Shown here one piece after another: positions 6,678 to 64,000 of a DNA stretch of 64,000 bases. Position 1 is the stretch's first letter. Each line of letters starts with the position of its first letter. This DNA comes from Vitrella brassicaformis CCMP3155 (lineage: Eukaryota; Protista; Chromerida). Location: the NCBI GenBank assembly GCA_001179505.1, contig CDMY01000242.1, positions 62,001-126,000 on the forward strand. The letters are read 5' to 3'. The translations under genes were made by a program, and so were the position numbers. A model generated the notes under the pieces. That model saw nothing but the letters and a program-made list of their open reading frames with translations. It made no database searches and was not told the DNA's origin.

Positions 6678-8848
6678 GCCACCCTCTAATCATGCGAGCT
6701 CAAATTCAACCTGGCCGAACCTCGCCCTTCTCGATAAGAAAGAAAAAGCGACTCCATCGGTTCAGGTAACATATCTCCGGGAGGAAGAGCCCTCGAAGTG
6801 GCTGATCTGACGTTCCCTCCATCCTCTGCGTGTGCTGCTGTGTGATGACGTCACCCACGGTGTGGTGCTGGCTGCAGGCCACCGAGTAAGCAAGAGGATG
6901 ACGTCGGTTCGGATGTTGCTGGCGGGTTTGTTGGGCGTGTTGGCCGTGGGCCTGCTGGGCCTTCCCCTCACCCACGGCAAGAACCTCTACACCCAGGAGC
7001 TCCACGACGACAGTGAGGGATGGATGGGCGCGAGATCTATGGATCTGTGGATCTATGGATGTCGTGGAGGCTCTGTGTGTGGTGTGGATGGATGGATGGA
7101 TGCAGCGGACATAGAGGTGCCCATGGAGGAGCGCATGGACGCCATCAGTGATATCGATAACAACCCCAGTGCCTTCGTTGAGGCTGGTGCGCAGATAGAA
7201 GATGAGCCAATGCCGGCCCACCACCGCCACTCGACATCCGTGCCATTCCGTGGTCTGATGGATGTGTGCATATCTGTCTGTGCGTCTGTGTGTGTGCAGG
7301 GTCCTCGGCTGAGCTGTCATCGGGTGCCCATCTGCAGGTGTCGTTGGCCGCCATCCAACATCATCATCGCCATCCGACATCAAGCAGCTGGAGCGAGGCA
7401 AGGGCAGCCACAAGGCCGCCATAGCGGTGCACCAGGCTGCCATCGTCACACATCAAGAGGCCCTCAACGCCATGGAGGCCGCCGAGCGAAAGATGAACGC
7501 CCTCACCGACCAACCGACCAGCCGCGGTGTGGATGGATCATCGACATGTGTGTGGGTGTGGTGCATCTGTGTGTGTGTGTGTGTGTGTGCGTGTGTGGGT
7601 CAGGGAAGTGTGCGTACGGGTGTGACGGCTGGGACTACGAATGCAGGCCGTCACGCGATGGGGATAGTTGTGGCGTCGGCTGCAAGTGCTGGAAGAAAAG
7701 CTGCGTTGTGAGTACTGACACACTTTGACGACTGGCAGCAACAGACAGACAGAGAGACAGACAGACGCGAAGGATCTCTCTGTGTGTGTGTGGTCTTCAG
7801 GAAGAAGCCGACTACGAGGAGAACGCATGCAAGGAGGTCAAGATCATACACACACACACATGTCATTGTCTGTCTGTCTATGAGTGTGTCTGTGTGTCTG
7901 TGTGTGGGTGCAGGAGGAGCAACTGTGTCTGAAAAACAGCGACAAATGCAAAAAGGCCAAAAATGGGGCGAAGTGTGGCACCGGCTGCGCGTGCTGGGAC
8001 AAAAAGTGCATCGTGAGTACTGACACACTTTCTTTGACGACTGGCAGCAACAGACAGACAGACAGACGCTAAGGATCTCTCTCTCTCTCTCTGTGTGTGT
8101 GTGTGTGTGTGTGTGGTCTCTCTGTGCGTGTGTGTGTGGTCTTCAGCATAAATCGATACACCCCAAATACAAGAAGGTCAAGCCACACACACACACATGT
8201 CATTGTATGTCTGTCTGTCAATCTGTGTGTCTGTGTGTGGGTGCAGGCTGACTGCCCGTGGATCCATGACTGAGGCGGTGAGAGCGCGTCTGGCGGCCGG
8301 CCCGGGCAGGTCGGTGAGAGACCACAAACAAACAAGACAGACAGACAGACCTCTATATATCAGCAGCGGCACATACATACAATACAGCATCAATCCAATC
8401 CGGCGTCTGTGCGTCTGTGCGTCTGTGTGTGCAGGTAGATATGTAGCTGTAGCTTACACACCGACGTGGCTAGGGAGGGGGAGAGAGAGGGGAGAGAGCA
8501 CTTTGCTTTGCTGACAGCATCAGACAGACACCTCACCTGTCCGGCTACACCATTTCTTTTCAGACGGGCGGGCGGGACACACACACACAGAGGGAGAGAG
8601 AGAGAGAGTTTGACACACACAGAGGAATTGGACACACAGGATTTTGCAATGTGTGTGTGTGTGTGATTTGGGTGATCCACCGTGTGTCTGGCTGTCTGCC
8701 TGTGTGGCTGCGCATCCAAGTGTGTGTCCATTGCGTCGGTGGAATGTCCTCTGATTGATGGACGGACCGATTCTTTGCGTGACGCCCTGTGTTCATCCGT
8801 TCAAGCGGTCCATACGGCGCCGACGAGTCAGTAGTTGAAGCGGTCGAC
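4970..8848. repeat. Left arm of a ~4 kb inverted segmental duplication (partner ~12339-16410)
   Basis: Reverse-complement identity seen directly, e.g. 6700-7020 vs 14200-14520 and 8280-8848 vs 12339-12930. The outer boundary is approximate because the TLDc 3' halves diverge. Confidence 0.9.
6898..8273 (+). CDS. Secreted Cys-rich (cystine-knot-like) peptide precursor, left copy, 8 exons; frameshifting insertion in exon 3
   Basis: Exons 6898-7012, 7106-7186, 7300-7526, 7604-7707, 7801-7836, 7914-8012, 8147-8176, 8247-8273. Signal peptide MTSVRMLLAGLLGVLAVGLLGLPLTHG. Cys modules CDGWDYECRPSRDGDSCGVGCKCWKKSC and CLKNSDKCKKAKNGAKCGTGCACWDKKC. Net +23 nt at 7356-7384 versus the paralog gives a TAG at 7422-7424 unless a cryptic intron is used. 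Confidence 0.72.
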
Positions 8849-9471
8849 AGTCGACCTATGTCTTTCCCAACACAAACCAATCCCCTCGGCCCGCCCACCA
8901 TCACACACACACACACAATAAAGCGGACGATCGTCCTCCTGCAGTGGTGAGCCTTTTGTCTGATGAAATGCCATTTCTCCTCAACACTCACTCAGTGACG
9001 GAACAACAGGCCGGCACCATCATCCCTGAGGCTGGCATGAAATTCGCTGCATCAGGAGCCTTGGCTGGCAACACACATACGCCCTTCCATGGTGCCCTTT
9101 CTATGGCTGAGTGCAGCTGCTTCAAGTTGCTGGCAGTGGCTCCACTGCATGAGGTGCGGCAATGATCTGAGCGATGGGGGAGAAAGGGGACCACCCTCGA
9201 TGAACAAACGATGCGATATAGGTGAGACAGACAGACATGGAATCGATGTGTCTGTCATGTGTGTCCACAGCCACGGACAGGCACATTCAATTTGCACACC
9301 ACACCCCCCGGGCCACACGGCGAGAGAATGAACGACACTCACAAGGATTCCCTCCAGCCGTACGTGGCCAATGAAACAAACTGGCCATCGTCTGTCCGTC
9401 TGTCTGTCTGTCTTTGATGAATGAAGGTCTCTGCCACACACCAATCCGATCCTCCCAAACCGCCAGCACCA

Positions 9472-61900: not shown

Positions 61901-63733
61901 AACGAGGAGGAGCTTTCCGAGAGGGCCAAAATGATGAGAGGTACAGTACCACACACAGGCGCCAACCCACCCCCTCCCAAAGACCCACATTTGCTGTGTA
62001 CCATGTGTGTGTGCAGGAGGACTGCGTGGCGGCGCACGTGGTGGTGGTGCTGGTGGTGGTGTTGGGGGCAGTGGGGCCGGGGCGTCGGGGGACGGAGGTG
62101 CGTGTGAACAGATGGCCAACCGCCCACACACTTGTGTGTATCCCTCTGTGTGTGTGTGTGTGGACATGTATGGTAGTGTCGTATCCGGGGGAGGCGGCTG
62201 ACTCAGGTGGGTGTTGGGTGTTGCACATCCATCCATCCATCCATCCGTCCATCGGTATGTATGTGTGTGTGTTCAGCGACTGCTCATCTGAAGCAGCTGT
62301 TGCTTGCATTCGGCACCCAGTTCCTGCGGTCGGGCGAGGACACTCGGGCGCCATACACGCCGCCACACCTGCTCAAGAGTAGTGACGATGATTGGTCAGT
62401 CAGTGAGAAAGAGAGAGAGAGAGGAACAGGAGAAGTGCATCAAGCTCTGTGTGCGTGTGTCCCACCCTACACACACAGGTTTGTGCAGTATCTGAAGGAG
62501 CGCGGGATTCCTCCTCAATACGTTGCCATGGTACACACACACACATACACACACCTCCCACACACAAGCAGGCAGAACACACTAATACTTACTTCCACGG
62601 TATATATCTGTGTGTGTCTGGTGTGGCCCCACACAGCGTCCCCCGACGCCCAAGAAGCGGCCCGAGGCTCAGCAGCACAAGCAGGACAGCAGTGCTAAGG
62701 ACATACACAAGAAGCTCCTGAGGTGTGCACCAAACACACAACACACAAATCGATATCGGCGCATCCATGTGTAAAGACGTCTGTGTGCGTGTTGCCTTAG
62801 GTTGCTGATTGGCACGGCCAGCGAGGAGGACACCTACGAGAAGGTGCGTGTGTGTGTGTGTCTGTGCGCCAATATCCCTATGTGTGTGTGTGCGCGTGTG
62901 TGTGCAGGGTTCGCTGGAGGACACGGTCATGACGTCCATCCAGGAGCTCAACGGCAAAGTCAAAAAGGTCCGTCCACATCCTCTCTCTCTCCCTCCTCTC
63001 TAGACATACATAGTTCATTGTGTCTGTAAATGGTTGTGTCAATGTAATTAATGTGTGCAGAGCACAGGCAAGAAGAAGAAGGCCACCAAGAAGGCCGCCG
63101 CTTCCACCACACAGCAGAGGTAAATAGGGTACCCACAAATATTGTATACACACCCACCCGCGACAATGCCCACATACACGTGTGATGTGTGATGTGTGTG
63201 TGTGCAGGCGTTCGTCCAAGACCAAGAAGGGCAAGAAGCCACACCGGCAGCAGCAGCAGCAGCAGCAGGTGCGGCAGAAGGACGATGAGGAGATGGAGGC
63301 TTACATGGACGAGGGAGACGAGGTATGCACCACCCCAGCCCCACACCGACCGAGACACACACATTCTTGTACCTCCCTCCCCATGCTATGTCCTCACTCA
63401 TAGGTGGACCACGAGGTGGCCCAGCTGCTTCTCCAGATGCGCAACAACAGTAAGTACCACACACTGCACACACTGACGCCCACCTGGATGTGTGTGTGTG
63501 TGTGTGTGTCTGCAGGCAGTAGGGCCAACAGGCGAGGAGGCAGCAAGGACGCAGTCGAGGTGGGCGGTGAGCACGACACACACACATCCATCCATCCATC
63601 CATGAACGGAGACATCATGCGTGCGTGTGTGTGTGTGTGTGTGTGTGTGAAGGTTGAGGGGCCCGAGGAGGTGGGGAGTCAGCAGAATAAGGAGACGGTG
63701 CTGGTGGAGGACGACAGGCACCACGACGAATGA
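58964..63733 (+). CDS. R2R3-type Myb transcription factor with a long low-complexity C-terminal region
   Basis: Spliced RGAWTAEEDATLAGLVQTLGARKWSEIAKRMPGRIGKQCRERWHNHLNPNVKKEQWSEEEDVHLMELHARLGNKWAEISRHFDGRTDNNVKNRWNSTLK. Downstream exons are less certain. Confidence 0.9.
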
Positions 63734-64000
63734 CTCACTTCTCAAGTCACCGATTGGTTGACAGACAGATCCTCACGCGCACACACCACACCACCACATC
63801 ACATCACATCACATTGCACACACACACACGGGGAGGGGAAGGCAGACACAAACAGGTCCTCTCCACACCACACCACACACACGCGTACCCTCACACGTAA
63901 GCTCAGCTCGTTTATTGCATGCCACCCATCCACCCAGTGACCGATGTGATGGATGGATGGATTGACCGATTCATGTCTCCCTTCATGCCTTACTGGCGGA

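What the first reader, a model, noticed from the sequence alone, without database searches (positions are those of the whole stretch)
6800..63940. Polarised, self-complementary intron microsatellites suggest RNA-structure-assisted splicing
Seen: on the sense strand, many introns have AC-type repeats [(AC)n, (ACAG)n, (AG)n] just after the donor and the complementary GT-type repeats [(GT)n, (CTGT)n, (CT)n] before the acceptor, often replacing a polypyrimidine tract (..gtgtgtgtgcag). Examples: 7708-7800, 7837-7913, 22940-23082, 54606-54712, 56082-56169, 59844-59945, and minus-strand DRC9 and pinin introns. I saw almost no introns with the opposite polarity; short (<70 nt) introns mostly lack repeats, and some introns carry only the GT side. 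Established: in teleost fish, (AC)m...(GT)n intron-end repeats pair, bridge the splice sites and bypass U2AF2 dependence. Inference: an independent and possibly much more pervasive version of this system in a chromerid.
Basis: partly seen in the sequence, partly recalled or inferred. Interest (0 to 1): 0.82.

Follow-up and report, generated by a model that had tools for sequence, protein, structure and literature searches.

The report
Polarised CA/UG repeats in algal introns
In this alga-like genome (Vitrella by the scan's notes), short introns usually end in a GU-repeat tract where a pyrimidine tract normally sits, and about half begin with a CA-type repeat, but the two ends vary independently, so fish-style hairpin-guided splicing is possible and not shown.

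Summary
In about 100-145 modelled introns (17 curated in an NADP-isocitrate dehydrogenase gene), AC runs lie near the donor (50 vs 9 near the acceptor) and GT runs abut the acceptor (72 vs 13). AC-5'/GT-3' introns number 38 of 100; the reverse arrangement 0. A test that needs no gene models agrees (p = 1e-10). By the published fish definition, 34-38% of introns qualify, against at most 2.3% in fish.

The signatures of selection for pairing are missing:
- Co-occurrence of the two ends matches independence (38 observed vs 36 expected).
- Run lengths at the two ends are uncorrelated.
- An intron's own ends pair no better than ends taken from different introns (-20.9 vs -21.3 kcal/mol).
- The ends pair as well across the intervening exon (-22.3).
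- Mean stability barely exceeds dinucleotide shuffles (median z -0.4).

The GU-type tract is near-universal (about 85%) with or without a CA partner, and it is anchored 2-6 nt from the acceptor.

Best reading: two independent, position-specific low-complexity intron signals, with hairpins arising as a by-product in about a third of introns.

Other windows of this genome carry notes of the same pattern. One follow-up there reached the same verdict. I found no paper describing it.

The parts
6800..63940 (.). Intron-dense gene region. It holds about 145 modelled introns (median 85 nt) on both strands, with CA-type repeats 5' and GU-type repeats 3'.
   Evidence: Self-trained gene models; model-free run-order test.
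54216..57199 (+). NADP-isocitrate dehydrogenase (IDH) gene with 17 curated introns. Nine or ten have both repeats, one has AC only, six have the GT/T-type side only or almost none, and none is reversed.
   Evidence: An uninterrupted IDH reading frame runs across all 17 introns. RNA-like contig joints and exon pieces fit the model. One exon matches Pfam Iso_dh weakly.
54606..54712 (+). Best hairpin example: (AC)n at the 5' end, (GT)14 at the 3' end, ending ..GTGTGCAG.
   Evidence: Minimum free energy -58.6 kcal/mol, z -3.97; the stem runs from +6 to -1.
56082..56169 (+). GC-AG intron. It begins directly with (CA)n and ends (GT)n CAG.
   Evidence: Required by the IDH frame. Fold -39.1 kcal/mol, z -1.8.
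54485..54546 (+). AC-only intron (62 nt) that is spliced.
   Evidence: Joint seen only in the RNA-like runs X1/X2. No bridging fold.
54942..55050 (+). GT-only intron (109 nt) that is spliced.
   Evidence: Joint seen only in X1/X2. Fold z +0.2.
55203..55304 (+). Intron with both repeats that is spliced.
   Evidence: Joint seen only in X1/X2.
7708..7800 (+). Quoted example: (ACAG)n/(AG)n at the 5' end, (CT)n(GT)n at the 3' end. It belongs to a repeated exon-intron module.
Evidence: Fold z -0.07. A paralogous copy differs by slippage at each end separately.
7837..7913 (+). Quoted example: (AC)n at the 5' end, (CTGT)n/(GT)n at the 3' end.
   Evidence: z 0.0.
22940..23082 (+). Quoted example: (AC)n at the 5' end, (CT)n(GT)n at the 3' end.
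   Evidence: z -1.7.
58973..59054 (+). RNA-supported intron of a Myb-domain gene: weak AC at the 5' end, (CTGT)n(GT)n at the 3' end.
   Evidence: Adjacent pieces of contig X2 record 9; sequence; Myb exon.
59172..59270 (+). Exception: an RNA-supported intron that is AC-rich at both ends, including just before the acceptor.
57057..57165 (+). Exception: GT repeats directly after the donor as well as before the acceptor.
   Evidence: Exon pieces 56972-57056 and 57166-57574 lie in one RNA-like contig; sequence.
25786..26085 (.). Assembly gap with 24 identical letters on both sides. It is probably an artefact of overlapping contig ends. It lies inside predicted minus-strand intron 25746-26180, which was excluded from the counts.

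Best explanation
The short introns of this genome (median 85 nt) carry two independent low-complexity elements, each positioned relative to its own splice site.

1. **3' tract.** An A-poor, G+U-rich tract of (GU)n, (CUGU)n or (CU)n ends 2-6 nt before the acceptor in about 75-85% of introns. It occupies the place of the polypyrimidine tract. I infer that it is the 3' recognition and spacer element: AG-free, A-free, with U at every second base, read by U2AF or by another GU-binding factor.
2. **5' tract.** A U-poor tract of (CA)n, (ACAG)n or (AG)n starts about 6-25 nt after the donor in about 50-60% of introns. I infer that it is an optional intronic enhancer or spacer, possibly compensating for weak donors.

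Both tracts change fast by replication slippage while total intron length stays about constant. Because the two motifs happen to be complementary, about a third of introns can fold into an end-to-end hairpin. That pairing is a by-product, or at most a generic aid, and is not the unit under selection.

Shown: the polarity, the anchoring, the independence of the two ends and the generic nature of the complementarity. Inferred: that the tracts act as linear signals, and which factors read them.
For: **Polarity and anchoring.**
- AC 50 at the 5' end vs 9 at the 3' end; GT 72 at the 3' end vs 13 at the 5' end; no reversed introns.
- The last T-type run ends a median of 6 nt (mode 3) from the exon. 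The first A-type run starts at a median of +12.
- At -25 to -5 the composition is T about 0.42, G about 0.35, C about 0.15, A about 0.08. TGTGT and GTGTG are six times commoner than the next 5-mer.

**Independence of the two ends.**
- Both repeats together: 50 observed vs 48.1 expected (n = 145) and 38 vs 36.0 (n = 100). The fit to independence holds in every length class and in curated IDH, 10 vs 10.4.
- Spearman correlation of run lengths is 0.06-0.12, not significant.
- Duplex energy of native ends is -20.9 against -21.3 +/- 0.47 for chimeras. In the high-confidence set it is -21.9 against -22.1.
- Across-exon partners pair at -22.3. Across-exon co-occurrence has the same odds ratio as within-intron co-occurrence.

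**The T-type tract does not need a partner.**
- It is present in 83-87% of introns in every length class, with or without an A-type partner.
- One-sided introns are spliced.

**Intron specificity and turnover.**
- Repeat runs fill 25.5% of intron bases, 6% of other non-coding bases and 1.4% of coding sequence.
- Total intron length stays at 83/88/91 nt with 0/1/2 repeats.
- Paralogous introns about 95% identical differ by indels at each end separately.
- AG is depleted in the 3' tract: 16 observed vs 54 expected.
- Donor score falls as the downstream A-type run lengthens (rho -0.39).
Against: - No binding factor or functional assay is available, so 'linear signal' is an inference.
- With n = 100-145, an odds ratio of up to about 2.5-3 for co-occurrence cannot be excluded. 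For long runs (at least 10 nt) there is a weak positive trend (11 vs 7.0 expected, p = 0.06).
- The content-free gene model gives an odds ratio of 2.45 (p = 0.016) for strict AC/GT. I attribute this to admixed false introns that lack both repeats, but that is not proven.
- Because the 3' tract is near-universal, the co-occurrence test has little room to show dependence.
- 19% of introns are clearly more stable than shuffles (z < -2), and some hairpins are very strong.
- The correlation with donor weakness may be an ascertainment effect of my predictor.
- Apart from 21 curated introns, the gene models are ab initio. About 10-15% may be false (21 null predictions on one reversed strand against 146 real).
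Confidence: 0.5

Rival explanations
1. Structure-assisted intron definition by a generic CA/UG zipper. As the intron is transcribed, the 5' CA-type tract pairs with the next UG-type tract to emerge. This brings donor and acceptor together and reduces the need for U2AF and a pyrimidine tract, as in teleost (AC)m-(GT)n introns, but it is used pervasively here. Because any CA tract fits any UG tract, no intron-specific matching is expected.
For: - The formal fish definition is met by 34-38% of introns (PMC4691745).
- There are zero reversed introns.
- 77% of minimum-free-energy folds have at least 8 pairs between the first and last 45 nt, though shuffled controls were not scored for this measure.
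- Strong hairpins enclose both splice sites in 54606-54712 and in the GC-AG intron 56082-56169.
- Introns with both repeats have the weakest donors: 5.9 against 7.7 bits.
- In the IDH pre-mRNA fold, same-intron pairs outnumber cross-exon pairs 309 to 119.
- Repeats are concentrated in introns.
Against: - There is no co-enrichment and no length correlation.
- Native ends are not better than chimeric ends or across-exon partners, so pairing does not specify which sites belong together.
- Mean stability is close to dinucleotide shuffles (median z -0.4). Several quoted examples have z near 0.
- 35-40% of introns have GT only and about 12-17% have AC only, and such introns are spliced.
- The A:T interaction on donor strength is not significant (-1.07 +/- 0.87).
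Confidence: 0.25
2. No positive function. Microsatellites expand by slippage in transcribed non-coding DNA. Purifying selection keeps only those that do no harm at each position. A-containing or AG-containing repeats are removed between branch point and acceptor, and T-rich or GT-containing repeats are removed near the donor. What remains is a polar residue.
For: - The two ends are independent.
- Paralogues show rapid length change at each end separately.
- AG is strongly depleted in the 3' region, 16 vs 54 expected.
- Total intron length is constant whatever the repeat content.
Against: - GT is not avoided in the 5' region beyond the general lack of T: 75 observed vs 49 expected.
- (AC)n contains no AG, yet it is still rare at the 3' end (9 vs 50).
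- The T-type tract is tightly anchored 2-6 nt from the acceptor and is present in about 85% of introns. That looks like a required element and not like tolerated debris.
- Repeats are about four times denser in introns than in other non-coding DNA. This figure is partly biased by my content model.
Confidence: 0.18
3. The introns descend from mobile 'introner'-type elements with terminal inverted repeats of (AC)n...(GT)n. Such elements would give the same polarity in either orientation of insertion.
For: The AC...GT order is symmetric under reverse complement, so a DNA-level inverted repeat would produce it on either strand (inference).
Against: - All-against-all BLAST of 145 introns gives 129 clusters. 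The multi-member clusters are local paralogues or joins made only through microsatellites.
- The ends are independent in presence, length and motif, which is not what a two-armed element predicts.
Confidence: 0.03

Closest known systems
Teleost and lamprey (AC)m-(GT)n structured introns (Lin et al. 2016, Genome Res 26:12, PMC4691745)
   Same: - AC repeats sit just after the 5' splice site and GT repeats just before the 3' splice site.
- The GT repeats obscure the pyrimidine tract.
- Predicted end-to-end hairpins form in individual introns.
- There are no reversed introns.
   Different: - Here 34-38% of introns qualify, against 0.09-2.29% in fish.
- Introns here are about 85 nt. The fish exemplar comes from that paper's 170-nt bin.
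- There is no co-enrichment of the two repeats across introns relative to exons.
- Mean excess stability over shuffles is small (about 7%). In fish, native introns were about a third more stable.
- The GU tract is near-universal and independent of the AC tract.
- ACAG/CTGT and AG/CT variants are common.
- Function and U2AF2 independence are untested.
Intronic CA-repeat splicing enhancers bound by hnRNP L in mammals (Hui et al. 2003, 2005; from my own knowledge, not read here)
   Same: CA-rich tracts lie a short distance downstream of a 5' splice site. Here they are associated with weaker donor consensus.
   Different: No hnRNP L-like factor has been shown for this organism. The association may be an ascertainment effect. 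The tracts here occur in about half of all introns and not in a few regulated ones.
Polypyrimidine tract and AG-exclusion zone read by U2AF
   Same: The position matches: the tract abuts the acceptor, is depleted of A and AG, and comes immediately before YAG.
   Different: Pyrimidines make up only about 57% of the tract. It is an alternating G/U repeat and not a C/U run.
[quoted passage not shown] 1995; cited in PMC4691745)
   Same: Intramolecular pairing could shorten the distance between the reactive sites.
   Different: Yeast uses specific complementary boxes in long introns. Here the complementarity is generic and the introns are already short.

Membership tests
Fish-type (AC)m-(GT)n structured introns (Lin et al. 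2016) | [quoted passage not shown] | tested here: met
   38 of 100 high-confidence introns; 50 of 145; 10 of 17 curated IDH introns.
Fish-type (AC)m-(GT)n structured introns (Lin et al. 2016) | Polar distribution: AC peaks after the donor and GT peaks before the acceptor | tested here: met
   AC 50 vs 9 and GT 72 vs 13. Relative-position histograms: AC 28/28/14/10/3, GT 6/10/13/40/62. The model-free test gives p = 1e-10.
Fish-type (AC)m-(GT)n structured introns (Lin et al. 2016) | AC and GT co-occur across introns above independence, and not across exons | tested here: not met
   Within introns the odds ratio is 1.3-1.5, p = 0.5-0.6. Across exons it is 1.4-1.5. Run lengths are uncorrelated. 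Power is limited to odds ratios above about 2.5.
Fish-type (AC)m-(GT)n structured introns (Lin et al. 2016) | Native introns markedly more stable than dinucleotide-preserving shuffles, forming a separate structured class | tested here: inconclusive
   Mean -27.9 vs -26.1 kcal/mol, median z -0.40, 19% with z < -2. Single introns reach z -4.0.
Fish-type (AC)m-(GT)n structured introns (Lin et al. 2016) | The two ends of one intron fit each other better than the ends of other introns (my own added test of co-selection) | tested here: not met
   Native -20.9 vs chimeric -21.3 +/- 0.47. High-confidence set -21.9 vs -22.1, and across-exon -22.3.
Fish-type (AC)m-(GT)n structured introns (Lin et al. 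2016) | Repeats and their complementarity required for correct splice-site pairing; splicing independent of U2AF2 | not testable with these tools
   This needs minigenes, in vitro splicing or knock-down.
CA-repeat intronic splicing enhancer | A CA-rich tract close downstream of the donor that compensates for weak donors | tested here: inconclusive
   The position criterion is met (median start +12). Donor score vs run length gives rho -0.39, p = 6e-5, but predictor ascertainment can produce this.
Introner / transposon-derived introns | Families of near-identical intron copies with terminal inverted repeats and unique cores | tested here: not met
   129 clusters from 145 introns. Only local paralogues share unique sequence. 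This covers the window only.

The most novel reading that the evidence does not exclude
Vitrella defines most of its short introns with a generic CA/UG zipper. Co-transcriptional pairing of the donor-proximal CA tract with the next UG tract juxtaposes the splice sites and has largely replaced polypyrimidine-tract/U2AF recognition. This would be an independent and far more pervasive origin of the mechanism so far known only from fish and lamprey. Independence of the two ends does not exclude it, because generic complementarity needs no intron-specific matching and the UG partner is nearly always present.
Probability: 0.2. Interest if true: 0.8.

Novelty: new variant of a known kind. Interest (0 to 1): 0.52.

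Why it matters
- **The 3' signal.** If the GU-repeat tract really stands in for the polypyrimidine tract in most introns of a free-living relative of apicomplexans, 3' splice-site recognition has changed its sequence code in this lineage. That would happen either through altered U2AF specificity, or another GU-binding factor, or RNA structure.
- **A natural test system.** The genome paper gives 22,817 genes with a median of 6 introns per gene (PMC4501334 supplement). That implies on the order of 100,000 or more introns (my extrapolation). They could show whether complementary intron ends are selected for pairing or merely tolerated.
- **Annotation.** The polarity is strong enough to help gene finding in chromerids.
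- **State of knowledge.** I found no published description of the pattern in the searched library.

Tried and rejected
1. **Codon-usage-only gene finder**. The coding signal is only about 0.15 bit per codon, so it either missed exons or chained the whole window into one gene. I replaced it with a 3-periodic Markov model plus an intron-content model, seeded on the curated IDH gene.
2. **Fetching the official gene models.** The search for homologous proteins with the 976-aa ORF found nothing. The look-up of encoding contigs with three ORF products found nothing.
3. **Read laying** skipped repeat stretches and listed only part of the joints. RNA support is therefore limited to three IDH joints and some exon pieces.
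4. **Specific avoidance of GT after the donor** (decoy-donor idea). Not seen: observed/expected is 1.5.
5. **Introner or terminal-inverted-repeat origin.** No intron families were found.
6. **Covariation between paralogous introns.** The copies are too recent (about 95% identical) and show only independent slippage.
7. **U2AF presence or divergence.** Not tested. No reliable query sequence was available from a tool, and the scan's notes hold nothing on it.
8. **Exon-wise Pfam scan.** It confirmed only the Myb exon, and weakly the IDH and HflX exons. Most long exons are low-complexity.
9. **Organism name.** It rests on the scan's notes and on the fit of GC content (57.5% vs 58%) and intron/exon ratio to the published Vitrella figures. 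I did not verify it independently.

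
Full report
**What the window is.** It has 57.5% G+C and one 300-N gap. It is packed with short exons and introns. The scan's notes name the genome as Vitrella brassicaformis. The published figures for that alga fit my models: 58% GC, a median of 6 introns per gene, and 16.4 Mb of intron to 35.8 Mb of exon (PMC4501334 supplement). 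My models give 15.4 kb of intron to 29.6 kb of exon and a median intron of 85 nt. I did not verify the name independently.

**The gap.** The last 24 letters before 25786 and the first 24 after 26085 are identical: a G run followed by AGAAAGACCCG. The two contig ends therefore overlap, and the gap is most likely an assembly artefact at a poly-G run. It lies within a predicted minus-strand intron (25746-26180), which I excluded from all counts.

**A test without gene models.** An AC...GT order reads the same on both strands, so it can be tested without knowing gene strands.
- I took runs of (A[C/G])n and (T[C/G])n of at least 8 nt.
- An A-type run is followed by a T-type run with a median gap of 40 nt; 60 of 97 gaps are under 60 nt.
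- The reverse order has a median gap of 108 nt; 16 of 97 are under 60 nt.
- Fisher p = 1e-10.
- This is what repeats facing each other across introns, and back to back across exons, would give.

**Curated introns.**
- The plus strand at 54216-57199 encodes an NADP-isocitrate dehydrogenase (IDH). Its frame reads without interruption across 17 introns that I placed by eye. One exon matches Pfam Iso_dh weakly.
- Two runs that look like transcriptome assemblies (X1 and X2; 'RNA' is the tool's guess) carry joints at 54484/54547, 54941/55051 and 55202/55305. The DNA runs X3 and X4 do not.
- The same RNA-like contig holds exon pieces 55510-55608, 56972-57056 and 57166-57574.
- Of the 17 introns, 10 have an AC run near the donor, 16 have a GT run near the acceptor, and 10 have both (10.4 expected). 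None is reversed.
- Intron 56082-56169 is GC-AG and begins directly with (CA)n.
- A Myb gene downstream adds RNA-supported introns. One of them, 59172-59270, is AC-rich right up to the acceptor, so exceptions exist.

**Window-wide models.**
- Codon usage alone is too weak, at about 0.15 bit per codon. I therefore wrote a splice-aware dynamic programme with 3-periodic Markov exon scores, short splice-site matrices and an optional intron-content model. It was seeded on IDH and self-trained.
- With the content model it gives 25 genes and 146 introns. It recovers 15 of 17 IDH introns after retraining, and leaves the long ORFs unsplit at the chosen penalty before retraining.
- It predicts 21 introns on one strand of the reversed sequence, so about 10-15% of its introns may be false.
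- On the reversed sequence its 'introns' show the reversed polarity (T-type at the 5' end 31, A-type at the 3' end 22). The predictor therefore does not impose the pattern.
- A content-free version gives 147 introns. The 100 introns shared exactly by both versions (with the curated IDH introns included) are my high-confidence set.
- Five of the six quoted examples have identical boundaries in the model.

**Polarity.**
- High-confidence set, runs of at least 6 nt within 40 nt of the site: AC 50 at the 5' end vs 9 at the 3' end; GT 72 at the 3' end vs 13 at the 5' end; AC-5' with GT-3' 38; reverse 0.
- The larger set gives 67 vs 12, 104 vs 20, 50 and 0.
- The polarity holds on each strand and after removing similar introns.
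- Composition runs from A 0.30, C 0.34, G 0.22, T 0.14 in the first fifth to A 0.09, C 0.18, G 0.34, T 0.39 in the last fifth.
- The 3' tract is thus G+U-rich (about 57% pyrimidine) and not a polypyrimidine tract. It ends a median of 6 nt (mode 3) before the exon. The 5' run starts at a median of +12.
- T-type tracts occur in 83-87% of introns of every length class, including those under 70 nt. A-type tracts rise from 38% to 70% with intron length.
- Repeat runs fill 25.5% of intron bases, 6% of other non-coding bases and 1.4% of coding sequence. My content model inflates this contrast somewhat.

**Is pairing what is selected?** Lin et al. (PMC4691745) rest their case on three computational signatures: co-enrichment across introns but not exons, a distinct class of unusually stable introns, and stability beyond dinucleotide shuffles. 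They follow these with experiments. Here:
- *Co-occurrence* equals the product of the marginals: 50 vs 48.1 and 38 vs 36.0. This holds in each length class. The odds ratio is 1.3-1.5, not significant, and is the same across exons (1.4-1.5).
- *The content-free set* gives an odds ratio of 2.45 (p = 0.016). Its 51 extra introns are long (median 181 nt) and poor in both repeats. That is the signature of admixed false calls, which create a spurious association.
- *Run lengths* at the two ends do not correlate (rho 0.06-0.12).
- *Own ends versus other introns' ends.* The 5' 45 nt of an intron pairs with its own 3' 45 nt at -20.9 kcal/mol, and with the 3' ends of other introns at -21.3 +/- 0.47. In the high-confidence set the figures are -21.9 and -22.1. 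Across-exon partners pair at -22.3.
- *The IDH pre-mRNA fold* has 309 same-intron pairs and 119 pairs between adjacent introns across an exon.
- *Stability.* Mean minimum free energy is -27.9 against -26.1 for dinucleotide shuffles, median z -0.40, with 19% below -2. Among the quoted examples z ranges from 0.0 to -4.0.
- *Paralogues.* Introns in the inverted duplication (about 6.7-8.95 kb against 12.3-14.5 kb, about 95% identical) differ by slippage at each end separately, in opposite directions.

**Other observations bearing on mechanism.**
- Total intron length is nearly constant (83, 88 and 91 nt with 0, 1 or 2 repeats), so repeats replace unique sequence.
- AG is depleted in the 3' tract (16 vs 54 expected). 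GT is not specifically avoided after donors (75 vs 49).
- Donor score falls with the length of the downstream A-type run (rho -0.39) and is lowest when both repeats are present (5.9 vs 7.7 bits). My predictor can create such a correlation, and the interaction term is not significant.
- Independence of the two ends also argues that pairing is not harmful. If the GU tract had to stay single-stranded, one would expect CA partners to be avoided.

**Conclusion.**
The formal fish pattern is present and 15-fold or more commoner than in zebrafish. The statistical marks of selection for pairing are absent at the power of one window.
- The GU tract clearly has a role that does not need a CA partner.
- I favour two independent, splice-site-anchored low-complexity signals (0.5). 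A generic zipper comes next (0.25), then filtered neutral microsatellites (0.18).
- The same pattern was noted by the scan on at least eight other pieces of this genome. One follow-up there (s1-226938) reached the same verdict. I tested its claim here on different DNA.
- I found no paper describing the pattern in chromerids.

**Left out.** Exons were searched singly by reference.

Noticed in passing
window:56082-56169: This is a GC-AG intron whose donor context is CAG|GCACAC, so (CA)n starts at +2. It is the weakest donor in the IDH gene and also carries a long GT tract.
   Followed up: partly
window:25762-25785 and 26086-26109: Both sides of the 300-N gap carry the same 24 letters, so the contig ends overlap at a poly-G run. 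The gap could probably be closed without any missing sequence.
   Followed up: partly
window:6700-8950 vs 12300-14500: An inverted duplication (73-96% identical in pieces) holds a secreted Cys-rich modular gene. Exon-intron modules are also repeated inside each copy. The copies differ mainly by microsatellite indels in introns.
   Followed up: partly
window:59271-59307: A 37-nt micro-exon lies in the Myb-domain gene. It is supported by 36 unplaced letters of RNA-like contig X2 record 9, between the pieces 59055-59171 and 59385-59493.
   Followed up: partly
window:55265-55288, 57312-57333, 59030-59056: Contig depth spikes (up to about 1280) and many false 'joints' occur at intron microsatellites next to acceptors. 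Contigs from many other loci share these tracts, which hints at how common they are genome-wide.
   Followed up: no
introns throughout the window: (ATCC)n-type tetranucleotide repeats are strand-biased in introns: 15 on the sense strand against 2 for the complement (GGAT)n. They often replace the GU tract before the acceptor, for example at 11296-11389 and 25303-25360.
   Followed up: no
window:39147-42077: A 976-aa ORF has no Pfam family and no relatives in the word search. Scan notes call it the cargo of a 5.6-kb mobile element.
   Followed up: no
window:19083-22143: An 18-exon plus-strand gene has an exon that weakly matches the HflX C-terminal domain (E = 9e-4), so it is probably an HflX-like GTPase.
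   Followed up: no
all modelled introns: Donor consensus is GT[A/G]N G[C/T] with G at +5 in 84%. Acceptor consensus is [G/T][T/G]CAG. Introns peak tightly at about 85 nt whatever their repeat content.
   Followed up: partly
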